Position numbers and translations under genes: made by a program. A stretch of 64,000 nucleotides of DNA from Fimbriosthenelais zetlandica (taxonomy: Eukaryota), in assembly GCA_977030845.1 (NCBI GenBank), contig OZ365110.1:20026001-20090000 (forward strand), given 5' to 3'. Below the pieces are notes generated by a model. That model was not told the origin of the DNA. It searched no databases and worked only from the letters and a program-made list of their open reading frames with translations. The number at the start of each line of letters is the position of its first letter. Position 1 is the first letter of the stretch. Below, piece after piece: positions 1,359-48,202 of the stretch.

Positions 1359-1444
1359 TATAACGAATTGCTTTCATTTTTTCCAGGTAAGTTGCGTTAA
1401 TTCTTGGCAGAATGGAAAAACGTTTGCATGAAGAAGGGGTAAGA
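1359..1444 (+). promoter_or_regulatory. Putative recursive splice site 1 (3'SS/5'SS junction at 1386/1387) with 52-nt cryptic RS-exon 1387-1438
   Basis: TATAAC branch-like motif at 1359-1364, AG-free zone 1331-1384, ctttcattttttcCAG|GTAAGT, and a downstream donor GGG|GTAAGA at 1439. The cryptic exon has stops in all three frames. Confidence 0.72.
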
Positions 1445-3010
1445 AGATGATCGCTTTTTATAATATTGTCAATATTATCACACACCACTGGTCCTAACTG
1501 TAATTTATCAGTCATGGTAATTCACCCTCTGTCTTCCCTAAATTACAACAAAGTGCAAATGTCTAGGCATCCACAATAAGTTGTCTCCTCCATTTTAAAA
1601 TCTTCCAAACTCTTTTTGTGTAATGCTCCCTTCTTATGTTAATAAAAATGTATTCCTCCCTGAACCAGAAGCAGAGCTCATTCTGCAGTACTGGCTCCAT
1701 GAGAATACCATAAAATAGTTTATGAATATTGACAACATGATGATGCGACCGCTGCACTTTTAATTTTGACAATTCTGAAACAAACTTCATCTAATATTTC
1801 ATAAATATTTATGCCAATGATGTGAAAATATTTCTCATTTGGAAAGTACAATGCAAAGAAAAGGATGGGTTCATTAAAGTTCAATGTTGAATTTCGTCGC
1901 AAGAACAAGATGCCATTTTCTTCTCGCCATTTTTTCTTGAGAAGAAAATGGCATAAGTAATGAATGAATGAATGGTGATTTAACGCCATGCCAGCTGCTA
2001 AGGCATAAGTAGCTATCAGTTTTCACAGTAAGAAAGTAACTGGTGAAGGATGAATTTCTGTGTTTAATGCTTCCCCTGCTTGCCACCAGTTGTACACTTG
2101 TACCATTGAACAACACAAGATGACGCCCCGCATGGAGTTGCTCACGGAGCAACACATCCAGCGCTCTCCATCTTCTCGCTAGGTGGAGGCACGTTTCCTA
2201 CAGTTGACCCTGCCTCTCTATATTATACTCCCTGCTAACTACTCACAATAGAGGTCTCATAAAGCAGTGCTTTATTTATTGTTTTAGAGAAGCACTAAAT
2301 CTTCAGTGTGATATTCAACAACCTTAAACATTTTTGCCACTTCTGATAGGGACCTTATTTCATGAAAGACCTATAATTATTCAAACATCATTCAGGATAT
2401 TTATCTCGAATTTACACTTCTATACATTCTCACGCACCTCTTTTGGTTCGGGGTAGGCTATATAGTGACTGACTTATAATAAATATAAGGTCCACAAGGC
2501 CTTTTCCATTTCTAGATTAACAAACCCCAGGCCTCGAGACGATCAATGAATACTTATCAGTACTAGATTTTGTTCTTTGCTATCTCTATTTACTTTGATC
2601 ATTCAATGCATTTACTGCTAGTTGATCAAATACAGACCCTCCTTCAAGTGGTAAAACAGAACTGTCTCAGAAATCTCTGAAAAAAATGTAATATTGATTT
2701 GAATGTTTGCCTTTGAAAAAGAATTTGGCATTTTAAAAGGCAGTACTAAATGGACTGGCTTTGGTTGAGTAGACGACACATTAGTAGTTGCGGTTGAAGT
2801 AACTCTAGCTAAAAGTGTGGTTTCGCCCCTGTCTTGTTCGTAATGGCAGGCCATTGAAGAGCTGCTCGCTGCCCCTAGTGCTGTTGGTTTGTGCTTTTCT
2901 CACCCCGAAAAGTTGTCGTAATTGCTCGCTTTTTGCTCCATCCAAGATCTGGTGAGCTCCATCCGTTCCTGCTCTTCCGCTCGTTTTCTCCCATTTCTCC
3001 TCTCCCCTCA

Positions 3011-3067
3011 CTGTCTGTCTGTCTGTCTGTCTCTTTCGCTCTCTCTCTGTCTGTCTGTCTCTCTCTC
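3011..3067. repeat. (CTGT)n/(CT)n compound microsatellite
   Basis: Directly visible: ctgtctgtctgtctgtctgtctctttcgctctctctctgtctgtctgtctctctctc. Confidence 0.95.
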
Positions 3068-3329
3068 GGCACAAAGATCAGGGAGCTTTAAACAAGAACG
3101 TGCCTCTATCGATTGAGTGAGAAAAGCCCCTCATTTAAGCCTACTTCAGCCATTCAGCTTGGATTCAGTATCTTATTTTACCAGTGCTGACTGTCCATTA
3201 TTGAGCACAGCTACATCACAAAGACACTCTGACGCAAGTGTGCATTGTCCTAGAACAACATTCAATGCCTTTTGTTTCAGCCATGCTGCGTTCTCCAAGC
3301 TCGCTGAATAAAGTTATTGTAAGGATTAC

Positions 3330-3575
3330 AAAATATAAAATAAGACGCCGATTGATGCATTCCCACCACTCATCTGCTCTCCGTTAGATTGATTTTCCAT
3401 TGTTAAATAATTATGAGGATTAACTGATTAACCAGAAATGAATTTAGAGATCAATTTGAGCCTTGCATAAGGATTTATTTTCATTCGTTTCTAAACTGTG
3501 CAAACAAAAATTGACTTTCTACAGTAAAGTCAACATGAAATATCTCCTATAGCTTCTCATTGATTGATTTCATTT
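3330..3575. promoter_or_regulatory. Candidate cis-regulatory island (PBX/HOX-like motif cluster)
   Basis: TGATTGAT at 3561-3568 plus nearby GATTGAT, TGATTAA and GATTTAT variants in sequence with no recognisable repeat. Motif evidence only. Confidence 0.3.
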
Positions 3576-6500
3576 CTTGCCCTCAAGTAACCTGTCGCCT
3601 ATGATAATATCGCTGTGGACTCCTATTACATATATGCACACGCTCCAAAGGCAAACAGTCCAATTCCAGCAGAGCGCCAACCCTGACCTCAGAACCATCC
3701 CATTCATATCGCTTGGTTAAAAGGCATTGTCTTATTAGAGTGCTTTCTCTAATACTCTCCACAGATGAAAGGTATTAACTTCCTCTCTTCATCTATTGGA
3801 ACTCTCAAGGGACAATTCCAGGTCCTAATTGCTTTTAAATGTGCAATTATATCTAATTCACCTAACAGATAACTGACTCTGCTTTTAGTTCTATAGCTTT
3901 GCCTTGGTATAATACAGCTATATTGTTCCTACATTCACCAAAGTAAAGCAAAGGATCTGCTTTGCTTTAGATGCTGCAAAGAGCCCTGTCATTGTGACAT
4001 CCTGGCCTGACGTGCGCCTCTGACGATAGGTGTCGCAGGGTCAAAGATCAAACCACTTCCGTCCTCCACTGGACAAATCAATGACGAGTGATTTATGACA
4101 CGAAAAGAAAACGGAATTGAATTGCAATCTGGAAAGCATTGCTGATGGGAGTCGTGGCAATTTCTCAATCTGAAAATGAACTGCATTCTCGTTTTGACCA
4201 TTTTAATTTCTTTTATCACTATAGAGAATATTGAGGAATTTGTAATTGACCATTTCATGATTGAAAAATGTTCCCCTATTGCCCGCACTTATATGTAAAT
4301 TTATATATATATATATGGCATACTTATCGATGCAGGTCTGTATTGCATTAGTTGACCATTTTCTATAGAAATTCTGTCTGGAGACGACATTCGTTTAGCA
4401 TCATATTTTACTTAATGCATGTTTCCTATATAAAAGGCATTAATAAGAAAACAATCTAATAAAGCAGAGTGGGAGAGGGAAGAGTGAAATATTGATGTTG
4501 TGACTATTAGTACGACAGGCCTGCTTGATGCTAGTGTTTCCAGGCTGGTTAGGCCTCATTCACCCAATACTGTCCCCCGGGCTTTTAGCCATGAAACATA
4601 CATATATACTCACGCATTGGTCACTGGCGGTATAAACGCTTGATGGTCAGACACACTGCTACAATATTTCACATGTCATCCCAGCTATGCAAACAGGTGG
4701 CCCCATGATGAAATTGTTTTCCAAATGTGGTCAGTGTTTTAGGTCAGCCATAGCCATGAAGGTTATGAGAGCAAAATTTGATTCGGTCTCGTAACATAAC
4801 AGGATGGTGTCCTCAGCCCATGAATAAATTACTCTTCTATCATGGAATTATTTTTGTTAGGAAATTTGTGAGTCGATTTCAATTAATCTTGATTGTAATT
4901 AGGGCATGCACGTGTGACAATGCAGTGCCATATGTTCCCTTTTAGCATTTGTTCTGTAGTTTCCGTCAATAAACATTGAATAAAAGGATCATTAACGGTT
5001 TTAAGCGCAAGGAATTTTCTATTAGCTTTTTCTTGTGCTGGCTAATGCATCTAGATGCCGGCTAAAATATCCCTAATCTTGATATGCTAAAATCAAATTT
5101 ATTGATGATTGAGGGCAATATCCTGGCAGCATACAATGAAGAACCAAGGATGACCATGATTCGTGACTATATTAAAGAAAAAGCTTTAGGCGTTGACTGC
5201 TTGAAAGGTTGACAAATAAAACAATGTTTACCATGCACTCAACTTGTTGGGACAGGATCTGGGTTGTGCAATGGGCGTCAAATAGCATTTAGCAGAAATA
5301 AATCAGGGCCATCATGAATAAGATGCCTTGTCTTTTCCCATTAACTCTAGAAGTCAATGACCTGATAAGATTACCATTAATGAGATGGCACATCCATTCA
5401 GGTCTGATGCCTCCCTCCTCAAGATTGATCATGTCAAGGCTGATCTATAATATTCCCCCATGCAGGTCATTGGAATATATTTGCCCATGGTGAATTGAAT
5501 TCAATATTCAATATTCCTCGTTTTGTCCTTGCAATCTGCTGCTCCAGTTTCTTGCTTGTAATGCCAAAAGGCATGACCTCCTTGTGAAAATTGGGTTTGC
5601 ATTGTGAATAATCCCGTGGCTGATTTGGTGTTCTACGTCAAATAGCATTTCAGTGACATAAAGCAGTTGTCTCGTTTGCAAAACCCTGAAGGTGGCATGT
5701 ATTGCAGATGCCCTTTTATTATCTATAGATATATTATGCTTTTATAGGAGTTGCATGATGCATCTGAAGATCAATTCAAAGACCCATATGGTTTACATAT
5801 TATGGTAATGCTCTCGATATATGAAGTGAATATTAATATTTTTAAAGCTATATAACATTAGGATTATAACCATTTGCCACATCCTGTCTACCTTTATGCT
5901 AATACGGTATCAATCGATCGTCGAAAAGGCCCCAGAAGATCAGATTCCAGGACCGTTTGTGCTGTACAAATGAGGCCTCACCGTTGGGTATAATACAAGT
6001 CGGGAAGAGGACAGTGAGTTTCTCACACTGAGCGTCTCCCATGGTCTAGATCAACATGATCTGACACGGGGAAGGTGGGCTTCAACCTCTAGGGGGATAT
6101 TGTCTTACTTACACCTTCATCTCCCGCCAGGCAAACTGTCATGTTTGCACAAGGATGTCCTGGAGAAAAAAATATATACTGATTTTCTCTGTCAACTCCT
6201 GCATCTTGTTCTTCCCCCAAAAGATACAAGCTGCAATTGACAGGAGTTCTGACAAAAAATGTTAGATAGGATTAGATAGAATGGAGATTCTGAGGATTTA
6301 TTTGATTCCCTAAACCTCTTTGTGTATTCATGGAATATGATATTTTCCTAATCTGTACCTCAGAGATGGATGGTAAGATGAGAATTGGATTTTCACTCCG
6401 GGATTCTCAAGATAATTAATATTGTATGTTGTATGAGGCAAATAATGAGACTCATCTCTCCTACATTCTTTTGACCAATTTGGACTATATAACATGGGTT

Positions 6501-8025
6501 AATGGCTAAATGCCATTTATCCAGGTTATTTTTTCATTTGTATATCATAATGTAATGTATCTATTTAACCTTTTGCCAAGGTCCAATCAACATGCAACTA
6601 TATAACTGGAATGGATCATATTACATTATGCCCTTTTGCCAAATGTCACTGCTAGAAATATGTTGCTCTCAACTGTGCTCTTATGGGGCCTTTAGGAAAC
6701 CCCGCCAGTGCAAGTAGCAAGTCAAGGTGGGTACTCAATTATACTAATGGCTTGCTTCAATACCTGCCTTCTTGCAAGATTTCCTTCTGCCTGGTTGCTG
6801 GTAAATCTAATGCATGAGAGACGCATGGTCAAATCTCAACACGGCCCCAGCAAAAGCCTTATGATGTCAGTCTTGCCTCAGAGGCCTCAGGTGATTTTGT
6901 GAATCTCGGAAGCAATTGCTCATTTGGCATTCCGAGTCTTTCCCCCCAGGAGGTATTGGGATTTCAGTCCAATAACAGATCTTTCATTGGCCATAATATG
7001 TTCCCATTGCCTGGGACTGAAGGGCTTCCATAATGCTCCATCCATATAAAACCCATTTTGCCCTTGGTTGAATTGTTATCAATAGTCTTATCAAAGAGTT
7101 AAAGCCAATATGCCATATGATAAGGGGTTGCTAGTAATATCCAAATGATTGCATTAGAGATCTACGATTGCTTACCAAAGCCTGCATCAGCCCCTATTCC
7201 CATGCATGGTAAATTGAAACAGGTTGAAATAACTGATAGTTGCTCTCCAGTAACCTTTCTGAAATGAATGTCAAAAACTACACCAAAGATATTATGTACA
7301 AATCAAAAACTAGGCGAGTTGAATTTGAAAATGCATCAAGAGAGCATTAAACAGTCTGAGACTCCTGATCTTCCTACTCATAGATACATTATAAGCCCCG
7401 AGATGGAGGCATCCAATCTTCTGAAAGGGTACTTTATCAAGATGCCCTTTTGGCTGAGGAACAGGACTTTGGACTGTATGATTAGGCTGTGAAGATAATC
7501 AGCGCCACCATTAGCTAATGGTAAAGTTCCCACTCATCTATTCAATCCTTACTTAAAACCTCTATATATTATATTTTGGCCTACTTGTTTTGATTTATTC
7601 TATATGATATGGGCCCAAAAACTGAACCAAAGTATTGAAATATTGTACTTGACCAGGATTCACATTTGTGCATAGATTCTGATATGTGGTTCCATCCTGG
7701 TACATATAATTCCCTCGAGCCAAAGTGTGGCCAGGTAGCTATTACATACAGGAGGTGGTATCAATTACATGCATCAAATAGGTACAGTATGAAAGCTCTG
7801 CATGCTCTTGCATCAGAGAATCCTAATTGCTACTATTACCTCTAAGCCATGTTAGTCTCTCTTACCATCTCTCCCCTTTCGTATTCCTCGCCTGGCAAGA
7901 AGCTAGCAGGAATAGCATACTGATATCGAATACACCGAATAATTCTCATTTAGTTTCCCATCCTGCCCATTGCACATGCCTTGTCACCAAGACAACCTGA
8001 CCTGTAGTGTATCCGTCAGGGATTG

Positions 8026-8053
8026 CCCCCCTCACCCCCCCCCCCCCACCCCC
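8026..8053. repeat. C-rich homopolymer tract (G-run on the minus strand)
   Basis: Directly visible interrupted poly-C: ccccccctcacccccccccccccaccccc. Confidence 0.9.
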
Positions 8054-8149
8054 ATATCGTGAGGTGTATGAGAGTTGCATTCATGAGTCGACGCTTGGAG
8101 ACCTGGCAAAAGGGCCCCACCTATTGGCCTGGCATCCTTTCAATTCACT

Positions 8150-8250
8150 GCATGTAAGACCAATCTACCAGAGCGTGTTTGCTGCGGAAGCAATTTTCCC
8201 ACCTGTGTTAGACAGTTAGACCTTGTTTGTATCTGTGCCAAGACTCAGCC
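8150..8250 (+). mobile_element. Highly degenerate CR1/L2-type endonuclease fragment
   Basis: Reads FPTCVRQLDLVC, similar to the EEP endonuclease PTR...LDLV motif. Short match. Confidence 0.3.
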
Positions 8251-9379
8251 AGGCAGGTATTTTTTCCCTGTCTGCGTTTCTGGCAAAATAGGGATAGCGC
8301 AAAGCATTGGCTTTTAATGCATGGAAGTGGTTGATACTCATCATTCATTTTGAGGTGTCTTTTGGGAGGAATACTAAAATATTGAGAACGATTTGTGCCA
8401 GGTTTTCTGGCTGTGTAGGCCATATTGCCCAAGACAGATGAGTGGTAAAATACCCCCAAATGTCTCCCCTCAATTTATATTTTTTCTGACCTCGTGATTT
8501 TCTAGATTGTGACATTGCTCTCCGGGGCCCGGTTATCTGTGGACAATTATTGAAAAATTGAACCAGATTTCCACCAAAGGTGATGGAGATTGCCTTTTAA
8601 ATTCAATTCCACACTGCCTCATTCCAATGGCAGTCGTTTTTTCGTCATCGCTCTAACGCATTGGTTCAGCTCTCATTCCACAATTAAATCCTTTCTTTAA
8701 AGTAAACCTCCAACCTCATGGCGAAGTAAATCAAAATATCACGTGGAAGAAAAAGCCATTTTCAATTTGCTTCAAATAATTAACAGTAGCGAGTGGAGTA
8801 ATGGAAATTGTGTTCATCCCATCGCCCAGCCTGTCCTTCCACGCACACATGACTGCCCTAAGCAGCTAAGCCTGTGAAAAGTACAATTACTGCCAATCTG
8901 GCCCGGAATCCAGGTCCTAACTCTCAGCCCCCAACATTTCTTGCAGCTCTCATGATGAATGTGATATCATTTTTTCCCTTCCATGCAGCATCCATCAATT
9001 ATAATCTAACATATCCCATAATTTTGCTATTAAAAGCAAATTAAGGCGCTCCTTCCCATACTAAAATGAATACAAACAAAGGAATGTCAATTTTTCGTTT
9101 TGCTTCTGTTTTGGGACATTAGTTTAGTTAACCGATCATGAAAACTTGTCGGTAGAAGGCTGAAGCTTGATTAAAAATAAAACCTTTCGTGCCAAGGTCC
9201 AATGATGTAAATCATTCAGTGGCACTTTTACACTTGGGACAGCTCGTAAGAGTTAATGTGAAGTCTAAGAAGAAGCCAAATGTTTCCCTTTAGCCCTTTA
9301 GTGGAGCACCTGCTACACTCGGTTTATGATGGCCATGATGTATTTGTCTCATATTCTTTTACATTATGAGAGAGATGCT

Positions 9380-9830
9380 GGAGAGGAGACACACATCTGG
9401 TAGTTTTCCTATATCCATCGTGGTATATAAGCTTAGGGCCTTTCACAATAAAAGGACACACAATATGAGGGAAATGGTGCATGGCAAGCCACTGCAATTA
9501 TTAGCTCTGGGAGGAATGGCCATTCACCCACATGCAAGCAACTTAAAGCCAGTGGAAATAATCCCCCGTCCACTTCCCCTAAAATATTAACCATCACTTG
9601 GCCACATCTATTGAGCCGAGCACGAGCCAAAACTATATCCCTCTGCCCACCCATGCAACCCATTGCCATCATTTCGCTCCCCTCCTTCCTTTCCATCCAG
9701 TGCTGAGCCATGGTATATTCAAATGCAGGGCCATGGAGATGTGCAGTTGATGGAGGGGACCCCCCTAACAGCATTCTCTGGACAGGTTTGCACCACTGCC
9801 TTAGATAGTAGGTTTCCATGGTAACGCTGG
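9380..9830 (-). mobile_element. Degenerate DIRS-like (Ngaro-type) retrotransposon RT/RNase H remnant
   Basis: Across frames: WQWVAWVGRGI*F, then SIDVAK*WLIF*GKW, then PELIIAVACHAPFPSYCVSFYCERP. This resembles WW..FL..WNG.S.F / TDAS..G.GA.F.G.W / LELYPIVVA..WG...I.FHCDN. Confidence 0.42.
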
Positions 9831-11999
9831 CTGTACGACCACCTCTTCTGTCCCCCTATTGGATCAGGGATATTTCCTAAGCTAAATTCCTCCACGCTTG
9901 CCAGGCCTATAGGTATTGTCATATTGTCACGCAGGGGGACACTTTAAAGCCCACTGCCCGTCCTACCTGACTTCCAACACAGCTTCTGGAGATTATTATC
10001 CTGAATAATGGGGTCATATTGCTACCTCAGGTGTTTTATTCCCCAGTGGTTGAGATGAGACAAAGGGATAGATCTGGGCTGCAAGGCACCTTCAATGCAA
10101 CCATCTTTTATTGATGGGGAACATCAATTGCTATTGCTTGTCCACCAATCACACTTTCACTATATATATGTAATTAACACATTGCGGAAATTAAAATTAG
10201 TGTTTAAGTCTGAAAATTGTAGGCTTATAAAGCACACTCATGTAGAACCACTTGAATGTACATTCAATGAGATGTGCTTTCGATTACCAATGTTCAGATC
10301 CTTGAGTAATGCAATAGGGTCTGTCTGAAATTCCTTTATCCTCCAATTTAAAACAGGGAAACCAATATTCGCGAAATCCTTTAATGGATGGGAACAGAGT
10401 GGAAACTGGTTAGTCCCATTTACCTCTGGGAAAGTACGCATATTTTTTCCTGGAAAATCCGATGAAATTGAAATTGGGAGAATATAGATGAAGGGGAGAG
10501 CTGTAATGGGATTTTAGTAAAAATTGAATCTAAAACTTTTTAAAAGCTTTGTTCTGTGTTTCAGCGTTCAGATCTCCACCTTCTCTATCTAATGAGGGTT
10601 CAGTATATTTTAGCCGGGCCTCCGGTTGACAGGTTCAGAGATTAGCAAACATTTGCATGCAATCGGTCTACAAAATGACTAAAGTGCCCTTGGAAGTGGA
10701 TGTTTTTTATTCGAGACCTGACTAAGGACAGATTCAATCATTTGCGACAGAAGAATATATGAGGAAATTCTTTATTCTTTGGCTGTAAATGATGGAGAAG
10801 ATCTCTGCACCTTTTGAAGTTTCCTGAAGTTACCTTTGACATCATTGGTGAGTTAATTAACATGCCCAATTTTCACAAAAACTTGTCAGGCCAAGATGCT
10901 CCCAGCCCATAGCATTATTATTATTGGTTAATTTTATTTTGAGTCATACATGGGCCCCAGATTATAATTTTTTGATGACTGTTCATGAGAGTTGACCATC
11001 TCTAGATACATTATCTGTTAGTTTCAGAGTTAGACAACATGATCTAGTTTCCACCCACCCACACGTCCAATCTTCATGTAGGACATGTGTTTAGTATTAT
11101 ATTATAGTGTATAACAGAATGTAGCAGATGGTCAGAGCTGAAATAGCATCCATGCATAGATCCATCCTATTGTACAATGTAATATATATTAGAGCAGCTG
11201 CAAAACTGTTTTATTTCAACGGGAGGGAGATAAATTTCCGAAGAGGAATATCATTAGTTATATTGGTCATGATTTATTCCACAATTGAAGCATCTGTACC
11301 ACTCCATACCATCACCAGCCATACGGGCGAAAATCTTATCTATTATTTCTGATCTGAGTTATGCATAATGAATCTTATTGACATCGCCACATATCGATGG
11401 CCTATTTTGCCTGGTTAAATTGCCTCATTCGTTCACAAAGGCATGAATTCTGCTTTTCAGGGGTTTGTGAATACATCGTGCCTTTGCTTAACAAACAGTT
11501 ATTCCAGTACAGGTGCAAAGCCAGATGCAGTTTAGTCACACTCCTCTTTATTTGAAGGGGGACGTGACAGAAATATAATCTCGTATTTTGTACGTGTTTG
11601 ATAGTTTTCATGTACAGAACGCTTGTGCATTATTCTGCTGTAAAAAAGTACACTTATGTCCAGATGATATATATAAGCTGGTCTCTGCATGCTGGCTTTA
11701 AACATGGCTGATGGTCCAATGTTGTCATTGCGATTATCCATCCATCCATCAGTTAATACACGACCATCTATATCATAGAGTCCTCAGCACTCTGGACGTT
11801 CGTCGTGGAGAGGTGGGGCGTTGAGGTGGCCTCCACACAGCTCCTGTCAACAACACAGGAGGCGGCGGCAGGGACGGGTGTGTTGGAGAGGAGGAGTGTG
11901 GCAGAGACACAGTGAGCTGCTGGAGGAGTAGTAGAAGGAGGAGGAGTAGGAGGAGAGCAGGGGACTCCAGACAGGGAAGCAAGAAACACGCTGCACACT

Positions 12000-13460: not shown

Positions 13461-13699
13461 CACTTGCTCCTGGTCATGCTAAAGCCTTGAGTTGATGCCA
13501 GTGAACAGTTGCAGTGCCTATTACACCTGTAAAGGCAAACCTCTACCTGAGGTTCCTCATATAATACAAAATCTACAACTCGACATCTTACCCGAAAGTG
13601 CTGCTTGATAAAAACATTGGCCACACCTGTGGAATTAAGGAACTAGGCTACACCCTCAAGGCAAATGCATAGAAATAGATTGTACGGATTAAGGTACTA

Positions 13700-13830
13700 C
13701 TTCAGGCTGATCAAATGGGACTTATTCAGGATAAGGTACTTCGCAAGCCAAGCATAGGTGATTATATTATGCTAAACAGCGACTTTAATTGCATGTCCAC
13801 CAATTTCAAGTATCATTACACCAGCTCTAT
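13700..13830 (+). mobile_element. LINE apurinic endonuclease fragment
   Basis: GDYIMLNSDFNCM resembles the IILGGDFNC motif. Isolated motif. Confidence 0.3.
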
Positions 13831-23890: not shown

Positions 23891-23969
23891 TCTAATTTTA
23901 TTTCATTAATTAATTTCAGGTGAGTACTACAGTGTGACGTTGCTGTGATGTATGGAGAGATAAGTATGC
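23891..23969 (+). promoter_or_regulatory. Putative recursive splice site 2 (junction at 23919/23920) with 44-nt cryptic RS-exon 23920-23963
   Basis: TCTAAT branch-like motif at 23891-23896, AG-free zone 23885-23917, T-rich tract ...taatttCAG|GTGAGT, and a weaker downstream donor TAA|GTATGC at 23964. Stops in all three frames. Confidence 0.68.
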
Positions 23970-36300: not shown

Positions 36301-37262
36301 ACTTACAGAAGCGTGGTTTCGCTACCTTTCCTGAACCCAAGTCAGAAATGCCCATATTGTCTTGCAGTTGTCGAATGGTAGTTCCTCTGCTTTCCTTTTC
36401 TATGCATAACCCATGCATTGTATGAAACCTTGGGGAATGATTTTTTAAATTGAAAATGGACCTGTCCTCAGTCGATCTGACAGTAGTCTATTCGAACTAT
36501 GCTGAGTGAACAGAAAATGAGCCCAAGTGAAATACGAGTTTAAAATTGAGAGTCCATGTTCCACGTTGCACAAATTAGATTCCTTTCCACGTGGAAGGAT
36601 ATATCATTTCCAGTAAGGAGACCTGCAGGAAACCTTTTGTTATATCATTATCCTGTCAAGGTGTACATATAATTGTCCTGCCACACAGAGGTGGACATAA
36701 TCCTGCAGTATGTAACCATCATATTTAATCTGTTCACAGCCGGGAGCTAGTTAGGCACCAGATCTTACCCGTCATATATATGTACCTTCATTCTCTAACC
36801 ACTCCATTGAGGGGGGCTCTTTCTCAAGGGGAGGAGTGGATTCAGCATCCACGACAGCTGAAGGGAAAGCCAGAGCAGCAGCAGCTAGCAGGGCCATGAT
36901 GATAAGGGGGTGCAGGCTGTAAATGTGGATTTGGACTCTTAGAGCTGGTGGTAATTACATCCGATCAGGCCCGTCCAATTACTGACTGCTTCTTAGCCCA
37001 CATCTCCTCTCTCCTAGCTCTATCTCTCTTCTCGTTCTATATTTCTCTCTATCCCTCTCCACCTCTCTCTGTGTCCCTCCCATCTCCATCTCTTTCCAGC
37101 TCGAGGCCTATATGCCACTTAGACTATTTTTCTTCTTGATATGGCCTACTAATGTAGCCTATGTGGATAATTCATAATTTTTATGTTTTTTTTAACAGCG
37201 CAATTGGCATATATAATAGTGTTGACATGTTCTCAATCACTGTCTCATTGAATTCTACCCTC

Positions 37263-37266
<4 letters not shown>

Positions 37267-37318
<52 letters not shown>
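37267..37318. repeat. (CT)26 microsatellite within a long polypyrimidine region (about 36995-37425)
   Basis: Directly visible perfect CT run flanked by pyrimidine-rich sequence. Confidence 0.97.
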
Positions 37319-37326
<8 letters not shown>

Positions 37327-40300
37327 TTATTTCCCTTTCACTCCTCTTCCCTTTCTTTCCCTCTCTTCCGTCTCCCTCCTCCTCTCCTTCCGCGTCCTCT
37401 CGATCACCCCCCTTCGCCTCTTCTCATCGAGGTGGCTGGTGTGAGGAGCGGTGGGCGTGCTGCATTGTGCACAGGTCATTAGTGACATATGGGCAAGTCT
37501 GAGAGGAGATGGGAAGCTGAGCTTGAACTGCTTTCTTAAAGGAAACCTCACGCTCAACCATCATGTAGCCCGGGGATAATACGGGCCACGACCTTGGCAT
37601 ATTGGTTTGACAGGCCTCATTAGAAGTGGCAGTAGCTGAGTAATCAACCTGCATAACCTTAGTTAGATGTCCTAGGATTTCTCTCATGGAAACACTTCAA
37701 CTATGTCACATTCAGCAGCATCAAATGTCTGCCAATAGTAAAATATTTAATTATTTTATATATAAATTGATTTATCATTATATATCACGGGTGACGGCCC
37801 CTGGATGCGTCGGATTGAATTGTAATCCCTCGGCATTTAAACGTTTTTGACTGTCTTGTCTGTGCATTTAATTCTAATTCTAAATTACCCTAGAATAGAC
37901 CACCTTCTACGCATAAGAATCGAGACATTTCATTTCCTCGCAGTCTGTATTGAAAAAAAGGACTCATGTCTGTATTGTTGGCTCACAGACTTCATTGTAT
38001 ACCATAAGCCTTCCTGATGCTGGGACATGTGGAAGGACCTACAGGATGGAACATCCGAGTAGCAAAACTAGATTGCTTCTGACAGTCTGAACACAAATAG
38101 GCCGTTTCTCTTACATATGTATAGATGTTGCACCTCCACCTGAAGGAAAGCTCGGATGAGGCAGCGACAAACCTGTTAGGTCCTACGTCCACTGCTTCAT
38201 CCTCTTGCATTCCAATGGAGATTGAACTGCGATTAGTTATCGCTGAAAAGCGTTTCCTGGACTGAATGGCATTTCTTTGCCTCCTTCCGACCCTATCATT
38301 TCTTGAAGGAAATTAATTAATCATTATTTAGCCTCATTGTGAATGTCTATCTTATAATGATTATTGCAGAGGGATCAAGCTCAGAGCTCACCCATCTAAT
38401 TCTTCTAGTTTGTTCTTGTTTCCCCAATTTTGCTTGGAAATCTCGTTAAAGAGTGTTTCAAGGGAAAGTTTAACGATTAATCAGTAGTACTTGGGTAGTT
38501 GAACTATCTATTTGGGCATTCTCATTGTAAGGTATCTCTATGAGAAGTGACTATATGCCTTAAGTGCTGAATCTCTTGGACTATCGATACCAGCGCCGAC
38601 TTGATTCATTGCTGATTCATGAGAATATGACATGTTGAAATTGCCACCAAATGGAAGGAGCCATGAAAGCCTGTGGGAATTTGATGAAAAATGTATAACG
38701 ATTCAGTCATTTTCAATGAATTATAGCTGATAGTGCTAGGCTGCTAGTTGTTTTTCCTTCGAATATGAGAAGCCAATCGATCATCAATCGCCATTCATAC
38801 TATCCTTGCGATTTGGAATGAACAGTTTTTTTACAAAATGAACAGATTCGGATCATACTAATGCAGTCTCGGGACTAATTTCTGTCTTTTGTTCAATTGG
38901 ATATTTCGAACAACTTTGAAAATCCTTTGGTCTTTGCTTATCATTATGTATGGCAGTTTGTGTGCTCTTAACAGTAAAAGCTTTACTGTTTCTGACTTGG
39001 AAAAAATTGTGACAAAACAAGACTGACACACATACTCATAGGTCGGATGCTGACAGGTAAATAAGCTTCAATGACACCGAAGATACACTATCTGTAATGG
39101 TTGAAATACCATCTTGTCATCATGGCATCCTATCTGCCCAAAGTTTTTCATCAACCTAGATGATAGGCACACAAGTGATACCATCTCCTTTTCACCTCTA
39201 GCAAGCAAGTGCCTCACTTGTCCCAGGCAGACCATTATTTGTCATATTAGGTGTGTATCGATTGACAATATTCCTGCTTTACCTTCACAATAGCTGCGTC
39301 CTTGCAAGCAACCCGAAGCTACAGAAGTGCTGAGTGGCAACTGCCAATAATGGAAAGATATATGAATGTCATGGCCCATCTGCCATTGCTCCTGATGTAG
39401 ATGTATCACCACTTAAGTTAAGTTGGAATATTTCCACGTGTACATCATAATTACAGGCTCTTAATAACATTGTGTTATTCCATGGGGTAGCATTCCAGAA
39501 AGTGCTTCAGATCGCAAACATTATTGTTTTGCTAGCCGCCGGTCTAATAGTCCATATACATTGCCTGAAGATAGCTATCAGTCAGTGAGCATGTACCGAT
39601 TCGCCATTGTTTCAGGCTTCCATTTTGGTTTCCAAGTTGAATACTCCAGTGTGGCTTCCAACATGGTTTTTTACCTTTCTGCGTTACTTACTAATCCATT
39701 ACCAAGCTGGGGAAGAATCACGCTTGTGTCAATAATTTACATCGCCTGACATGTTATTTTCGGGGAAATCCATCTTCAGCAGGAAGTGGCCTTTCACATC
39801 CCATATGTACATGTCTAGCACGATGGTCTCAAATAATTATGGCCTTGAGTCCACTAGCTTTAACTAGTGTACACCTATCTATGGGATATAGAATAAATAT
39901 GTTGGATTCAAGACGAAGAATCTTACTTTCAAGCACAATTTCTGTTTTGATACATCTAAATCGAAGCTCGCCACCAATGCTCGTTGGGAAAACTTCCTTG
40001 ATTAGAATGATTATGAAAGTTGGCCAAGTGAAAGTTTAACCAGGCTGACAGCTCTATAAAACTCTTCCTATAGGGCAGACATAAAAGCATGTCCAGTTTT
40101 TTTTAGTGGTGGCTGATGGTAAAATGTGCTGAATAAAGACTTGTAGCAGTCATTACCCAGCCTCTCTGCTAACAATGTAGCTAGCCGGGACACTGTGTCA
40201 GCAAAATGCCTCAATTTCCTGCCCGGGTTAGAGTTTCCTAGTCGTATTTCCTGCACTGCCTATAGCTCAGAAAGGTTTCTTGCCTTGTATACCTCCTTCG

Positions 40301-41169
40301 TTCACATTGAGCACAATTTGGTTTTAACCTGTTCAACATTTTTCAACATTTTGATCCTGAAAACCAGTCACTCTGATTCATTAAATATGAAGATATAGAA
40401 AATATTCAGCCCTTAGAGCAGGCTCATATTCTTGCAGAAATATTCCCTGATTATTTAAGGTTATCGTATATGACGGAAACCCCCGATGTCTGATAAGGAC
40501 ACGAGGACGGTGTTGCTTTTATGGATAAAAGCCTCAACCATAATATTACCTCTCTAGAGATATATACAATACTATTCTTGTTTCAGCTATCATTAATCAC
40601 GATATCTCATCATCCAGCCTTCATTCTCCCTGCCATGAAATCTTGTCTTTCTATTTCTGTATTTTATCATCAGATCTCTATGAAACATCATTACGTTCAA
40701 GGTATCCATGCATGTACATATAGCTTTATTTGACAACTTCAACATTAAAAGATCGAAATGAGGGAATCACAATATATCATGCAAATGCTGCAGTTAACTT
40801 AGATAGGACTTTTATGTCCTGAAGGCAAGTCGTTTGTTTAGTGTTGGTTTACAATAGAAGTGTGTAATGTTTAAATTCTTTGGATGCTTGAGTGACTGAA
40901 GAACCTTGAAGTGGCTATATAATGGAGCTGCCTCCTCATTTACAGTATGCATGGAGAGGAGGGGATAAAAATGTCAACCCCTCCAAGTGGAAGATGTGTG
41001 TTAATAGTATATAACGTATGGCACTTGAACCTTGAAGGGACTCCCTGACAGACAGAGCTAGTACTATGAGAGTCTTGAAAGTAGGCCCCTACTTTGGACT
41101 TTCTTCTAAACTTTACTGAGTAGATTTTACGGATAAGTGGTGTGTCTGGACATACAATAGAGTATAGAA

Positions 41170-41340
41170 CTTAATGAGGAGGCTTTAGAGCAGATTAACT
41201 CTTGTATGAGTATGTATCTTGACCGATGGAGTGGAAGGACCAGAGTCTAACGTTTACAGAGTCTGTCAGATCAATATTGGGATGGCTGTACAGTATGTAC
41301 TTGCCAAGGGGCACAGTCAAAGCCTTGGAAATGCGATGGT
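41170..41340 (+). mobile_element. Possible L1/Tx1-clade LINE fragment
   Basis: NEEALEQINSCMSMYLDRWSGR, then in a shifted frame SLTFTESVRSILGWLYSMYLP. This resembles NW....KI...L..W..R.LS..G....S.L.Y....LP. Weak match. Confidence 0.3.
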
Positions 41341-44300
41341 TCTTGGAGCGTAAGATTGGACCGTAGCCTGCAAGCTTTTAAGCTGCCGATTTGTGAGAGG
41401 CAATGGAAATAATGGCATTGTTCAGTAGCCCATAGTATTCTGCATATATGTATAACGGCAATATACTTTAAGTAAACTTTGTCCTGAAAACTTGCAGTGA
41501 CTTGGAAGACATGAATTATTTGAAGTAATAAATCATGACACGGACTTTAGCGTACATACATGCTCAATTCTAAGCTCTAGAGATTTTGAAGGGGGATATT
41601 CACTGTGGGCATGAGATCACACTAAAAACTTGATGGCATTTTGTTAAAAGAAAACATGGAAGAGGCCTTTATGGCGATTTTAAATAATTTATAAATTAAT
41701 GTAGTCAGGAATTTGTTGTGCCGGAAAATGATGGATCAATTTCCCTAAACGATGAGCGAGAGGGATACGCGTAGTCCTTTTATCTCATTGTGAAAATCAT
41801 TACCTTTTAAAGGGACACTTTAGCAGGGTTGACCCCCAACTGGCTACAGGGCCTTTCATCGAAACGAAGCACTTTACATATTTCTGATCTCCTGGGAACG
41901 GCCTAGAACCTCCGGGTGTCACTCTGAAAAAAGTCAACTACTGTAATCTGCTCTTACACTAATGCATCATAAAATAATCCTCCAATATCCAACGACACTT
42001 AGCTGGTATAGTGCTCATTGGGAAATGACACTTTACAAGCGTTCGCTTGGGCCTATAATGGTTACTGCGGAAATATATTGACACTTTTTAGGAGCATAGC
42101 ATTGATGGATTTCAAAGTAAAAAGGTTGGAGGAATTCATGCCAGTATGATATGGGAGACTGATTCCCTGTGAGGAACGGAAGCTAAAGTGCTCTAGCCTA
42201 GCCAAGTATCCAGGGGATTACTTTTTTTAAGTTTTCGTTACTAAGAGATGACTGTTTTCCGTTTAATTGCTAGGATAGAACTAACAGTACGTCGTATTTG
42301 TATGTCACTTATATATATCAGGCATTGACACTAATAGAAAAGGGACATGGATAACAAAGGTGGTGGCTTAAAACGGACTGTGTTGCCATGGAAATACTAA
42401 CACCTGTTTCATCTGAGTATAGACCCGTTATAACCTAACGCCATGCTGTATTTGAAGTATTGATGGTATTTCAGCGCTCAAAACCCTCTTTGTGTCTTGC
42501 GAGTCCAAGGATTCATCAGCTATACAATAAGAAAAATATCATTGTCTACTTCTAACCTGAAGCCTTTCATATTCATACTGCTGAGGTACAGACCGGGATT
42601 TCTTCGAGGATACCCCTTTTTCTGTGAAGAATCCACCTCATCACCTTTTTTGAGACAAAGAACAATGACAAAAGCACTTTTTTCCTTTCATGCCTCTACA
42701 CCATCCCCGGGGAATAATCCAACCCCAGCCACAGCTTGAGAACTGCTTATGGCGTGTGTTAAGGCATTATATGGGTGATGCCTTTATCTGAACATTATTG
42801 AGGCCATATCATTTACTCTGAGCTTGATACTCCAAGAACCGTAACTGAGTACCATAAACACTATGAAGGCTCTGAATACTTGACAATAGCTGTTCGCTTT
42901 CATGAATTCCCAGATGGGCCTAAATGTTATTCACTCGTTTATGGCATTGCCAACTTAATGCCTTAACCTCAGGCTGGTCTGATAAGTAATAGTCTAGAAG
43001 AACAGGGACAATCACCAAACCCTGAAGGCTAATTGAACCTCTATGAAGCTATGGAAGGGGGAAGAAGTCTCTTTTTAAGGTAAAATAGTCTCTGTTTTAG
43101 AGCAAATAGAGCTTTGTCGACGATATGGCATCCTTTGCTCGAGGTAATGAAGTAACACAAACTGCAAGACATGCATGCCTTGCAATATTTCATTGGAGGA
43201 CAAACCAGGTTAAATAATGTGGTTCGATTAAAGATTAAATCTATGTCCACCCACCGATATGATACAATATTTTAAGATTCATTTGATCATAATTGATAAG
43301 CACTGATACCCCTAGTTTTAATATTCCCATTATGCAGCAGCTTATGGGTTCTTTATACGGTAGATCAGAATGTGATTCATTCTGAAGGTGATTGCATTTT
43401 TTCTTTACATAATTATTTCTTCTGGTACCACAGGCTTGTCTAAATATAATGAGATACCAAGATGAAGCACAAGCTATGAAAATTGAAGTAGACAGTGAGA
43501 GACACAAGTAGATAGAATGAGAGATTTGCTTCAGGCATCAGGCAGCTTTTTCTATATCGTAGCAGGTGGTTTTGCCATCGTAAAATCCTTCTAGACATAG
43601 TGAAAAAGCTTCCTACTGGGCTTAATGAATGTCTTGGCACCTGGAGACAAGAGAGAACAAGATGATGTAAATTTAGAATGGAAGATAGTGGCTCATCTCT
43701 TCTATCCTTCCAATGTCCTGAAGACTTCGAACCAATCTAACGGACAGCTTTCATTTCTGATGTCTTTATCACACGTAATATCACAAACTTTTGTAGTCAG
43801 CTCAGTTTAGAATTCATAGCATGCTAATAAAGTCTGGTTTGATGCGCGTTTATACCTGGAAATCCCCCTTTTATGAGTGATGTGCTGGCTGCTCCAGACG
43901 GTCGTTTATCATTTTAGTTTTAATTGAATTTGTACCGGCATTTTAATTGGTCTCTGCACTTTGAGACCACACCTTAAAAACAGCCGGAAACAGATAATGA
44001 AAAACCATTGAAATATCACTTTCCATTCGGCAAAAATCAATACTGAGAGACCAGCCCATTCATTCATTCAACATGGTCATTTTGTCTGAAAATAAAATAA
44101 AAGAAATACAAGTAGTCCAATTATTGGGTTTTTCTAACATGTGGAGGCAATACCAAGTGAGGCAGTTAGAACTAGGATCTGAGTTTGACTGCATGCAAGT
44201 CAGGTTCTAGGATAGATAGGCGATTAAGTTTGCTCAGGCCAGAAGCTTTAGATGGGTGTATTGTAACAGATGACAGGTTAGCTATTTTGCCAATGAAAGC

Positions 44301-45096
44301 CTTTACTTTACTTTGCTTTGAAGTCAGGATTGATGTGCAAAATTCGTGTTCCATCGACTTAAATCCGCTGAGACCACAAGATCAATGAGATCCATGAATC
44401 ATTAAGAGGAGGATGACCGGGAAAAACGGGATTCCCTGGACAACTTTCATAGTTTGAAACTTGTCCTTTAAATTTTGACAATGGCAGATCCTGCCAAATA
44501 AAAAAGAAACACTGCTCGCAGTTGGGACTTAATAGGATGCTCTGTTGAGCCAGTAAAATACTGGCATTACTGAATACCTAATAACCCCAAATACGTTTAG
44601 TTCTGGGGTCATGCTTGCTAAGTCAGAAGGTGATCAATGGTTTCTGCCGCAGGCTAAAATTACTACACATCCATCACTTTGACTGGTTTGCGTGCAGCCA
44701 TATCAAAACTCCTATTATTTCAAAGCCAGGTATGCCAATGGATGCCCCTGCCAAATGGAAATAAAGAACCATAACAGCAGGGTTGGTTGGTTGTGTCACC
44801 TTGTGGGGGTTCCCCTGCCTAGCAACCAGCTTAGCTAGTGCCCCACACATCCAGGTGATGGCAGCACGGATCCGTGGTCTTTTGCAGTCATGCCTCATGG
44901 TAGAAATCTACCCATGCAGCTGGTGTTGCTACATACCATGCAATCTTGCTCCATTCCATGGCAGAACGTTCCTACCCTCCTAGAGGCGGCAGCACTGTTT
45001 GCAACTCCACTTGTCTTCCAAGTTGGTGCTGTAACTAACTAAAGGTGGCAGCAGTTCTCTCTTCAATAGTTGATTTCTCTTTGTGTTCTTTGTAAA

Positions 45097-45850
45097 GTGT
45101 GATCACAATTCACAAGAATTGCTGACCAATCTTTGTGCAGTATGACCACAATACACAAGCAGTCCCGACCAATTTATGTGCACTATGACCACAATGCACA
45201 AACAATCCCGACCAATTTTTGTGCAGTATGACCATAATACACAAGCAGTCCCGACCAATTTTTGTGCACTATGACCACAATGCACAAGCAGTCGTGACCA
45301 ATCTTTGTGCAGTATGACCACAATGCACAAGCAGTCGTGACCAATCTTTGTACAGTATGACCACATTGCACAAGCAGTCGTGACCAATCTTTGTGCAGTA
45401 TGACCACAATGCACAAGCAGTCGTGACCAATCTTTGTGCAGTATGACCACAATGCACAAGCAGTCGTGACCAATCTTTGTGCACTATGACCACAATGCAC
45501 AATCAGTCGTGACCAATCTTTGTGCAGTATGACCACAATGCACAAGCAGTCGTGACCAATCTTTGTGCAGTATGACCACAATGCACAAGCAGTCGTGACC
45601 AATCTTTGTACAGTATGACCACAATGCACAAGCAGTCGTGACCAATCTGTGTGCACTATGACCACAATGCACAAGCAGTCGTGACCAATCTTTGTGCAGT
45701 ATGACCACAATGCACAAGCAATCCCGACCAATCTTTGTGCAGTAGGTTACAACCCACAAGCAGTACAGGTCAATTTATGTGCAGTATGACGACAATGCAC
45801 ATGCAGTCCCGACCAATCTTTGTGTAGTATGATCACAATCCACAAGTAGC
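45097..45850. repeat. 43-bp minisatellite (VNTR), about 17 copies
   Basis: Consensus GCAGTATGACCACAATGCACAAGCAGTCGTGACCAATCTTTGT. The centre is homogeneous, the edges are degenerate, and one unit near 45740 is 42 bp. Confidence 0.97.
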
Positions 45851-46509
45851 TCTCCCAAAAATCTGGCCGAACCTTTCTCATCTCCATAGCTAGGGCCAAT
45901 GAAAAACAGCTGTCAGGTGGCTATAGATAATAGTGTAAATCGACACCCAATATATTCTTTGAGGAAGGTGCACAAGTTGAAGTCGGTAATTAGTCTGGTC
46001 CTCAAATCTATCAAGAGAAGACTGGACTAAAAGAGACCACATGTTTGTTTGAAGAAAATAAACGAGGGGGATACGGACGGAGAGATAGGTATGAGCTCAC
46101 CGCTGACACTTGTTTATGTTAGAGGAGATATTTTTCACCTGAGTTATCAATTGTGAAGACATTATGAAGTACATCAGTGTTATGTTGGTCGTTTTATGAT
46201 TGATGCTCAGATAGAGGAACTCCCTGAAACATGTGTACTCATGAATGGTCCTGATTTCATACAGGTGTTGATTTTCTGTAGATCACAATATTGCACTATA
46301 AATAATCTAGGAATGATCTTGAAATGTTAGTCAAGATTTTTAATGAATAGTTTTCTTGGCATCTGAAATGTTATCCAACTAATGTGATAATCCAAGCTCT
46401 TATGCTTCATTTAATATTAGAGTACAGCGAACTTGTACATACTGAGAAATCTGGTATACACTCTAAATTTGAATTTGTTTTTTAGCAAAAGATTGTATAA
46501 TGATTTCAA

Positions 46510-46850
46510 TTCTATTATTCAAGATTTGAAATCTGTCATTTTACCCGGATTCAATGTAATACCACACACCTTCTGACATTCCAACAACATTACATATTGT
46601 CATTTCTTCATCACAAATAATAAGAAAGAAATGAGTTCACTATAAATTCTAGACTAAGTTTTTATTTACCTTCCAGCAACTTCTGACTCCTGTTTGCAAT
46701 AATGCTCTCTTCAAATGTCATATATATCTCGTTACACTCCTTTTTCCGACCATGATCTAACTTCTACCATTTCAATGCGGCAACTACATCCTGTACTTAA
46801 ACTTGTACTCTTTTTGAACATCGTATTGTGCAAAATGGATATTTTGCCTA
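46510..46850 (+). mobile_element. Degenerate L1/Tx1-type endonuclease fragment
   Basis: SVILPGFNV (GDFN-like), EFTINSRLSFYLPSS (SRLD.F..S-like), TPFSDHDL (SDH) and FLNIVL (LN.SLL-like), in the expected order. Confidence 0.42.
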
Positions 46851-48126
46851 CTTTGTTTTTTTGAGAACTACAAGTGACCATTATTGTTGTTCCTTCCTCA
46901 ATTCCTCCTCTTCTTCCTTCTTTTCTTCTTCGATGTTTTCTCCCCTTTACATTTCTACATTAGTGATTATCTTGTTTTGGTCTCTTCCTCTACATCTCTT
47001 CTAGTCTTATAATGACAAACTATAGGCCACATTTGGATCCAGACCTTTCCTATGATGTAGTAGGTATTAGGAATAAATGGCCTGGATTGTTTTGCCAGTC
47101 ACGGAGGGTCTAGAACACATTATTATTTCCTGACACTGAAACAAAACACTCCCTCCCCTGGCCCTCCAAGCAACAACCCATGATTGCATTTATGGCTGCT
47201 TAGCATGCAAAGAGAACAATGAGAGCTGAGTTAATTGATTCCTACTGTCAGCCCTCCCGAGTTCATTGGGAAGAGCAGGACAAAAGATGGACATTTTAAT
47301 CAGTTACATACATGCAAAACTTCTATTACTGAGAATTATGTATCTGTTTATCTTGCCATTGACTCTTGTCTATTACGTAAGACTTTTAAGATGCCATTTC
47401 TTCTTACTCAACTGCATATTTTATAAATCAGAAAATGTGAGGAAAGGGGGATCCGAATAGAATTACAGTAGATAATATAAGAATTGATTATTTAGTTCTT
47501 AGCAAGATATAATATCCCGGAAGATATGCACACATGTTTGCTTGGAGCAGTACAGTATTGCTTGGGAAAATATTGAATTGGTTAGGTTATAAGTCTATAT
47601 GTCAGGGGAAACACTTTTCATACAAACTGTCGGTATATTTCCACCTCATGCATGTTTTATGGGAATAAGATGACATCATAACTTAACCTATAAGTAATCA
47701 TCCGTTACTGAGAGGTGGCATTTTCTGAATCTACTTCCCTAACCTTCATGGGGTGCCATACTGCTATATTCACTTCGGTTCCCTTTATATTATCCCCTCT
47801 CTCTACCCGTCCCACATTTACTGACCAAAACTCTAGTTCTTTTTCCCTCTCCTTTCCCATCATGACGTGGTAGATGGCTAAGTGTATGGATGTCCTGTTG
47901 CCCCAAGGGAAATGGGACTTAAGTGACCACCATTATTCCCATGATGGATATTGCATGCAGTCCCAGTGTTACCATTGTTCCGGTATTATGATTGCATGGA
48001 ACATTATGACATTGTTCAAAAGGATTTTTTTTGTGTAATTTAAGCAGATTATTAAAATCATTACTGCAGCCTTTGTCACAGTAGCATTTTCGACTTGCAC
48101 AGATTTCTTGATTTGTAAAATAATGA

Positions 48127-48202
48127 CTTAATGATATTTTCTTTTCTTTGTAGGTAAGTTTCAATGCGACGGAGATCGTTTAACGTAGGAGAGATGGTGA
48201 GG
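48127..48202 (+). promoter_or_regulatory. Putative recursive splice site 3 (junction at 48153/48154) with 43-nt cryptic RS-exon 48154-48196
   Basis: CTTAAT branch-like motif at 48127-48132, AG-free zone 48103-48151, ttttcttttctttgTAG|GTAAGT, and a downstream donor ATG|GTGAGG at 48197. Stops in all three frames. Confidence 0.75.

What the first reader, a model, noticed from the sequence alone, without database searches (positions are those of the whole stretch)
1359..48202. Three evenly spaced recursive splice sites (ratchet points) marking stepwise removal of a giant + strand intron
Seen: in my manual scan of the + strand, AGGTRAGT occurs three times (junctions 1386/1387, 23919/23920, 48153/48154). 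All three have a YAG, an AG-free zone of 33-54 nt, a pyrimidine/T-rich tract, and a branch-like YTAAY/TATAAC whose A lies 22-24 nt upstream of the AG. Spacing is 22,533 and 24,234 bp. The only minus-strand AGGTRAGT I found (about 57225) has GAG and no tract, which acts as an internal control. Established: juxtaposed 3'SS/5'SS sites that subdivide long introns are the recursive-splicing ratchet points described in Drosophila and in a few long vertebrate genes. Inference: this gene's intron is spliced recursively in about 23-kb steps. The DIRS/Ngaro/L2/RTE/Tx1 content does not look Drosophila-like, so this may extend regularly spaced ratchet points to a lineage where they have not been described.
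Basis: partly seen in the sequence, partly recalled or inferred. Interest (0 to 1): 0.88.

Follow-up and report, generated by a model that had tools for sequence, protein, structure and literature searches.

The report
Candidate recursive splice sites, unproven intron
Two, possibly three, spots on one strand of a 64-kb gene-free stretch look like the "ratchet points" fruit flies use to remove very long introns in steps; this is a good but RNA-unverified example of a known mechanism.

Summary
AGGTRAGT occurs at 1385, 23918 and 48152 on + and once on -, with the stated spacing, AG-free zones and branch-like motifs.

The bare 8-mer count (4) equals chance (3.2 expected). The full architecture does not. 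I took a rule from 36 validated fly sites: TT at -6/-5, YAG|GTRAGT, and at most 4 purines in -20..-5. It hits 1386/1387 and 48153/48154 on + and nothing on -, against 0.004-0.011 expected per strand.

Those two sites also carry a short stop-filled "cryptic RS-exon" (52 and 43 nt) ending in a second donor, as in flies.

Site 23919/23920 is weaker. Its tract is interrupted by A (6 purines) and it has no good downstream donor. It has a perfect donor, TT, CAG and a near-midpoint position (about 0.03 such sites expected by chance).

Not shown: that the window is an intron of a + strand gene (I found no exon on either strand), any RNA evidence, conservation, or the lineage. The "even 23-kb steps" rest on two intervals and on the weak site.

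The scan has flagged similar arrays in other windows of this genome. Verdict: partly supported, a new member of a known kind.

The parts
1362..1392 (+). Site 1 composite: branch-like TATAAC, T-rich tract, TT at -6/-5, CAG|GTAAGT (junction 1386/1387)
   Evidence: composite score 12.3, the best of 449 AGGT sites on both strands; 3 purines in -20..-5; passes the fly-derived rule.
1387..1438 (+). Putative cryptic RS-exon 1, 52 nt, with stops in all three frames and a purine-rich 3' end
1436..1444 (+). Downstream donor of RS-exon 1, GGG|GTAAGA. It has one fewer U1-complementary position than the ratchet donor GTAAGT.
   Evidence: score 4.2; a donor this good within 25-100 nt is expected 4.2% of the time.
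23892..23925 (+). Site 2 composite: CTAAT branch-like motif, T/A-rich tract, TT at -6/-5, CAG|GTGAGT (junction 23919/23920). This is the weaker candidate.
   Evidence: composite 5.9, rank 4; best full donor score on the + strand, 8.9; 6 purines; passes only the relaxed rule, 0.025-0.03 expected per strand; no good downstream donor.
48128..48159 (+). Site 3 composite: TTAAT branch-like motif, pyrimidine tract, TT at -6/-5, TAG|GTAAGT (junction 48153/48154)
   Evidence: composite 11.8, second best; 2 purines.
48154..48196 (+). Putative cryptic RS-exon 3, 43 nt, with stops in all three frames
48194..48202 (+). Downstream donor of RS-exon 3, ATG|GTGAGG
   Evidence: score 5.6.

Best explanation
Sites 1386/1387 and 48153/48154, and less surely 23919/23920, are recursive splice sites of the fly 'ratchet point' type on a + strand pre-mRNA that runs through the whole window. 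Inferred mechanism: the upstream exon is first spliced to the strong acceptor (branch point about 23 nt upstream, T-rich tract, YAG). Recognition of that acceptor is helped by exon definition across a short non-coding RS-exon of 52 or 43 nt that ends in a second donor. Ligation places the exon next to GTAAGT, which regenerates a consensus donor. That donor outcompetes the downstream one, so the RS-exon is discarded with the next intron segment. The intron would thus leave in pieces of about 23 kb, or one 47-kb piece if site 2 is inactive. Shown here: the sequence architecture, its strand specificity and its excess over chance.
For: (1) A composite acceptor+donor score puts sites 1 and 3 at 12.3 and 11.8; the next best of 449 AGGT sites on both strands is 6.4. 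(2) I took a rule from 36 RNA-validated fly sites: all have TT at -6/-5, and 0-4 purines in -20..-5 by my tally. It gives 2 hits on + and 0 on -. Markov simulations expect 0.004-0.011 per strand. Allowing 6 purines gives 3 hits against 0.025-0.03 expected. (3) Internal test: of 80 fly-like acceptors on +, 3 are followed by GTRAGT against 0.019 expected (Poisson P = 1e-6); on - it is 0 of 56. (4) Among the 12 best + strand acceptors, only sites 1 and 3 have any donor scoring at least 4 within 300 nt. Each has both the 0-nt donor and a second donor, at +52 and +43. The chance of such a second donor is 4.2% per site. Both putative RS-exons have stops in all frames and lengths that are not multiples of 3. 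This matches the roughly 50-nt, non-conserved, out-of-frame cryptic RS-exons of flies (PMC8605326). (5) TT at -6/-5 at all three sites, as in 99.5% of fly ratchet points (10.1101/006163). (6) The flanks of the three sites share no similarity with each other or with the rest of the window, so this is not a repeat-borne motif. (7) The segment sizes fall within the fly range of 2.6-63.6 kb, and fly sites tend to split introns into equal chunks (PMC6110457). (8) T exceeds A on + in 26 of 32 2-kb bins, weakly consistent with + being the sense strand.
Against: I found no exon, promoter-like CpG island or coding signal on either strand, so 'intron of a + strand gene' is unproven. There is no RNA data and no orthologous sequence. 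The 8-mer count itself is at chance. Site 2's composite score of 5.9 is what one expects about once per strand, its tract lies outside the range of the fly sites I tallied, and it lacks a proper RS-exon donor. Acceptor-donor pairs scoring as high as the two RS-exons also occur on the minus strand. G/C skew does not support + strand transcription. My thresholds were set after seeing the data, and the scan looked at many windows. In vertebrates most motif matches are not detectably used (review PMC13149111).
Confidence: 0.58

Rival explanations
1. The sites are functional splice elements but not zero-nucleotide ratchets. They would be ordinary alternative, poison or non-coding cassette exons (1387-1438, 48154-48196) of a + strand transcript, or exons of an unannotated long non-coding RNA. 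Site 1 could also be the plain donor of a 280-nt non-coding exon 1107-1386.
For: Both short exons have good acceptors and donors. An acceptor at 1106/1107 (score 5.2) pairs with the site 1 donor. Flies and mammals also have expressed RS-exons (PMC8605326).
Against: Two independent exons that both begin with GTAAGT would be a coincidence of about 1e-3 each at best. All three frames are closed in both. The 0-nt donors match U1 fully at +1 to +6, whereas the downstream donors have one or two mismatches, which favours skipping under the fly competition model.
Confidence: 0.2
2. Chance. Splice-like motifs arise at random in 64 kb of T-rich, CpG-depleted non-coding DNA and were picked out by a reader who scanned many windows.
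For: 4 AGGTRAGT found against 3.24 expected. Composite scores of 5.9 or more are expected about once per strand. Thresholds were chosen after the fact. Branch-like yUnAy motifs are common.
Against: Two rule-passing sites on one strand have probability of about 1e-5 to 6e-5. Both also have a second donor, a further factor of about 0.002. The acceptor-donor association on + has P = 1e-6, with none on -. For site 2 alone, chance remains a live option (about 0.03 per strand).
Confidence: 0.1
3. The composite motif is carried by a dispersed repeat family, so its recurrence in this window and in other windows of the genome reflects copies of one element rather than selection for splicing.
For: The scan has flagged similar sites in several other windows of this genome.
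Against: BLAST of +/-400 nt around each site finds no similarity between the sites or elsewhere in the window. Beyond the core, the flanks differ.
Confidence: 0.03

Closest known systems
Drosophila intronic ratchet points (zero-nucleotide recursive splice sites; Hatton 1998, Burnette 2005, Duff 2015, Pai 2018, Joseph 2018/2021)
   Same: Juxtaposed strong acceptor and consensus donor at AG|GT. TT at -6/-5. Branch point 22-24 nt upstream (fly range -36 to -21). A cryptic, non-coding RS-exon of about 50 nt with a second donor at sites 1 and 3. Segment sizes within the fly range. Several sites on one strand.
   Different: There is no RNA, lariat or conservation evidence here. The host intron is not demonstrated. 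The -4 base is C, T or G rather than the predominant G of flies. Site 2 has a poorer tract than any of the 36 fly sites I tallied and no proper RS-exon donor. The genome is CpG-depleted and not fly-like, and its lineage is unidentified.
Vertebrate recursive splicing through RS-exons (Sibley 2015; Blazquez 2018)
   Same: The acceptor is recognised by exon definition across an RS-exon, whose inclusion would introduce stop codons. The sites lie in long, probably neuronal genes.
   Different: In vertebrates only a handful of fully suppressed intronic sites are established, usually one per intron. An array of two or three in under 50 kb is fly-like rather than vertebrate-like.
Predicted recursive site in the locust NPF1 230-kb intron (PMC8892266)
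   Same: A motif-based prediction in a large-genome, non-Drosophila animal, made with fly-derived matrices.
   Different: That site had U2AF65 pull-down support. Here nothing experimental is available.

Membership tests
Fly-type intronic ratchet point | [quoted passage not shown] | tested here: met
   Sites 1 and 3 have 3 and 2 purines in -20..-5, YAG|GTAAGT, and the top two composite scores of 449 AGGT sites. Site 2 meets it only under a relaxed rule, with 6 purines.
Fly-type intronic ratchet point | TT at positions -5 and -6 (99.5% of fly sites) | tested here: met
   All three sites have it; the criterion comes from 10.1101/006163.
Fly-type intronic ratchet point | Cryptic RS-exon of about 50 nt ending in a second donor weaker than the ratchet donor | tested here: met
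   Site 1: 52 nt, GGG|GTAAGA. Site 3: 43 nt, ATG|GTGAGG. Not met at site 2, which has only GAT|GTATGG (score 0.3) at +30 and a GT-less GAG|ATAAGT at +40. The criterion comes from PMC8605326.
Fly-type intronic ratchet point | Lies on the sense strand inside a very long intron (over 11 kb, mostly over 40 kb) | tested here: inconclusive
   There is no exon or coding signal on either strand in 64 kb and no CpG island. T exceeds A on + in 26 of 32 bins. An earlier, unchecked note places KChIP last exons about 18 kb downstream; its strand is unknown to me.
Fly-type intronic ratchet point | Sequence conservation of the AG|GT core above that of the flanking intron | not testable with these tools
   No related sequence could be retrieved: exact ORF look-ups and one homology search across site 3 found nothing.
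Fly-type intronic ratchet point | Exon-to-site junction reads, saw-tooth nascent RNA profile and segment lariats | not testable with these tools
   No RNA data are available.
Fly-type intronic ratchet point | Segments of intermediate size, with sites placed so as to split the intron evenly | tested here: inconclusive
   The intervals are 22.5 and 24.2 kb. Site 2 lies at 48.2% of the way between sites 1 and 3, a 3.6% chance for a random point. There are only two intervals, the intron ends are unknown, and the result depends on the weak site.
Vertebrate RS-exon recursive site | RS-exon whose inclusion is suppressed by the reconstituted 5' splice site and would be a poison exon if included | tested here: inconclusive
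   Both putative RS-exons have stops in all frames and lengths that are not multiples of 3. Suppression itself cannot be tested.

The most novel reading that the evidence does not exclude
Fly-type zero-nucleotide ratchet points, complete with cryptic RS-exons and placed at near-equal steps of about 20 kb, are a genome-wide feature of a large-genome animal that is neither an insect nor a vertebrate. Stepwise intron removal would then be an ancestral or repeatedly evolved bilaterian answer to giant introns, not a fly speciality. This window would be one of several arrays the scan has flagged in the same genome.
Probability: 0.3. Interest if true: 0.6.

Novelty: new member of a known kind. Interest (0 to 1): 0.4.

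Why it matters
A 2026 review (PMC13149111) describes recursive splicing as documented in Drosophila, mouse and human. Abundant intronic ratchet points are known only from flies. A genome in which strong, strand-specific ratchet-like sites recur in gene-free stretches tens of kb long would offer a second system for asking why and how long introns are cut in pieces. One total-RNA data set would test it directly. On its own this window adds two good candidates and one doubtful one. It proves neither usage nor lineage.

Tried and rejected
- Rfam and tRNA scans of the window, in the hope of an intronic RNA gene that would give the host strand, found nothing.
- Regex searches of all six frames for EF-hand and KChIP/NCS core motifs gave no credible exon.
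- Pfam on the ten longest ORFs gave only artefacts on the tandem-repeat ORF.
- An acceptor/donor/open-frame scan for exons gave similar numbers on both strands and no convincing coding exon.
- To reach other copies or related species I tried one exact look-up of the ORF across site 3, ten ATG ORFs and one homology search with the ORF spanning site 3. All were empty, so conservation could not be tested and the organism could not be named.
- U1 snRNA antisense pseudogene as the source of CCAGGTAAGT at site 1: rejected, because the upstream sequence does not continue the U1 complement and Rfam finds no U1.
- A first independence estimate gave 0.003 composite sites per strand. I replaced it with Markov simulations, which give higher and more honest expectations: 0.02-0.03 for the summed score and 0.004-0.011 for the rule.
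- I did not paste the fly motif table into a script, to avoid typing much sequence. The purine tally of the 36 sites was done by hand.
Full report
**What is there**

The window is 64 kb of 40% G+C, CpG-depleted (observed/expected 0.43) DNA without N runs.
- It has no Rfam family and no tRNA.
- It has no CpG-island-like bin.
- Only one start-to-stop ORF exceeds 150 aa, and that one is the translation of a 43-bp tandem repeat.
- None of the 122 stop-free frames of 75 aa or more looks like a protein, and the ten longest ORFs give no meaningful Pfam hit.
- Searches for EF-hand or KChIP-type motifs and a simple acceptor/donor/open-frame scan find no convincing coding exon on either strand.

So the window is non-coding throughout. 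Whether it is intron or intergenic cannot be read from it. T exceeds A on the + strand in 26 of 32 2-kb bins. This fits + being a sense strand only weakly, because G/C skew does not agree.

**The observation**

- AGGTRAGT lies at 1385, 23918 and 48152 on + and at 57224 on -.
- All three + sites are YAG.
- The AG-free zones are 54, 33 and 49 nt.
- The branch-like motifs have their A 22-24 nt upstream of the AG.
- The spacings are 22,533 and 24,234 bp.
- The minus-strand match sits behind a purine-rich stretch with GAG.

The count of the 8-mer is not remarkable: 4 found, 3.24 expected, and 44 of 100 shuffles reach 4.

**Is the full architecture more than chance?**

I scored every AGGT on both strands with a generic acceptor matrix plus a donor matrix. 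Sites 1 and 3 score 12.3 and 11.8. The next best of 449 sites is 6.4, on the minus strand, and site 2 is fourth at 5.9. Third- and fifth-order Markov simulations of the + strand expect 0.018-0.03 sites at 11.8 or more per strand. They expect about one site at 5.9 or more. On this score, sites 1 and 3 are outliers and site 2 is not.

To avoid my own matrix, I took a rule from experimental data. The first 36 high-confidence recursive sites in S1 Table of Pai et al. 2018 all have TT at -6/-5. By my hand tally they have 0-4 purines in -20..-5, with a mean of 1.7.

| Rule (TT at -6/-5, Y at -3, AG|GTRAGT) | + strand hits | - strand hits | Expected per strand |
|---|---|---|---|
| At most 4 purines in -20..-5 | 2 (1386, 48153) | 0 | 0.004-0.011 |
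| At most 6 purines in -20..-5 | 3 (adds 23919) | 0 | 0.025-0.03 |

An internal version of the same test needs no simulation. The + strand has 80 fly-like acceptors, and 3 of them are followed by GTRAGT where 0.019 are expected (P = 1e-6). The minus strand has 56 such acceptors and none is followed by GTRAGT.

A further and independent feature concerns the second donor. Of the twelve best + strand acceptors, only sites 1 and 3 have any donor scoring at least 4 within 300 nt. Each has two: the 0-nt donor, and a second one at +52 (GGG|GTAAGA) or +43 (ATG|GTGAGG). A donor that good within 25-100 nt is expected 4.2% of the time.

The thresholds were chosen after seeing the data, and the scan has read many windows.

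The flanks of the three sites show no similarity to each other or to anything else in the window. A repeat-borne motif is therefore excluded here.

**Site 2**

Points in its favour:
- It has the best full donor score on the + strand.
- It has TT at -6/-5, CAG, a 33-nt AG-free zone and a CTAAT branch-like motif.
- It lies at 48.2% of the way from site 1 to site 3, a 3.6% chance for a random point.

Points against it:
- Its tract is interrupted by six A residues.
- It has no proper downstream donor, only GAT|GTATGG at +30 with score 0.3.

Two curiosities may bear on this. It shares the 8-mer GGAGAGAT at exactly +35 with site 3; the 8-mer occurs four times on the + strand of the window. The 8-mer is followed by ATAAGT, which resembles a consensus donor but lacks the GT. 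I rate site 2 as possible. It could be active, decaying or fortuitous.

**How it most likely works**

The anatomy of sites 1 and 3 matches the current fly model (PMC8605326; 10.1101/006163):
1. The acceptor is recognised by exon definition across a short, non-conserved, out-of-frame cryptic exon.
2. The upstream exon is ligated to it, which re-creates a consensus donor (GTAAGT).
3. That donor outcompetes the cryptic exon's own weaker donor.
4. The cryptic exon leaves with the next intron segment.

Both putative RS-exons have stops in all three frames and lengths that are not multiples of three. The intervals of 22.5 and 24.2 kb, or 46.8 kb if site 2 is inactive, lie inside the fly range of 2.6-63.6 kb. 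Fly sites tend to split introns into equal pieces (PMC6110457).

All of this is inference from sequence. Transcription, the host gene and use of the sites are not shown. An earlier, unchecked note of this scan places the last exons of a KChIP gene about 18 kb beyond the window's end, followed by a CYP26 gene. If KChIP is on +, the window would be its large upstream intron. I could not check this.

**Rivals**
- The sites could be ordinary alternative or poison exons, or exons of a non-coding RNA. Site 1 could be the donor of a 280-nt non-coding exon starting at 1107. I give this 0.2.
- Pure chance for all three sites: about 0.1. Chance for site 2 alone is much more likely.
- A repeat-borne motif: about 0.03.

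**Comparison and novelty**

This is the known kind of element described in Drosophila. The closest alternative is the vertebrate RS-exon type, of which only a handful of fully suppressed sites are established.

A 2026 review lists Drosophila, mouse and human as the organisms with documented recursive splicing. A locust site has been predicted with partial support. My literature searches surfaced nothing for other invertebrate phyla, but they were not exhaustive.

The scan has already flagged similar arrays in other windows of the same genome. These are leads I did not test. They make a genome-wide phenomenon plausible, and they make this window an additional member rather than a first.

**Verdict**

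There are two strong candidates and one weak candidate for recursive splice sites on the + strand. This is a new member of a known kind. The decisive evidence (RNA, conservation, host gene) is missing.

Noticed in passing
window 23954-23965 and 48188-48199 (+): The 8-mer GGAGAGAT starts at exactly +35 after the junction at both site 2 and site 3; it occurs only four times on the + strand of the window. At site 3 it runs into the RS-exon donor (G|GTGAGG). At site 2 it is followed by ATAAGT, which resembles a consensus donor but has A where the G of GT should be. This could be a shared purine-rich enhancer at a fixed distance, or a lost donor at site 2.
   Followed up: partly
window 45087-45846: A 43-bp tandem repeat of 17.7 copies with 89% matches. 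Read on the minus strand it yields the window's longest ORFs (182-187 aa). Their weak Pfam hits (zf-C2H2_10, RecD_N) are repeat artefacts.
   Followed up: partly
window 37267-37326: A (CT)30 microsatellite. It inflates the + strand count of long pyrimidine runs.
   Followed up: no
whole window: There is a persistent T-over-A excess on the + strand (19,865 T against 18,359 A; 26 of 32 2-kb bins) without a matching G-over-C excess. CpG observed/expected is 0.43 and no CpG-island-like bin exists.
   Followed up: partly
No open frame of 75 aa or more looks like a reverse transcriptase, endonuclease or recombinase. Self-comparison finds no dispersed repeat apart from the tandem array.
   Followed up: partly
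window 43973-44085 (-): This is the best acceptor-donor pair on the minus strand (acceptor score 9.1, donor 4.6, 113 nt), with no open frame. It shows that exon-like pairs of this quality arise on the presumed antisense strand too.
   Followed up: no
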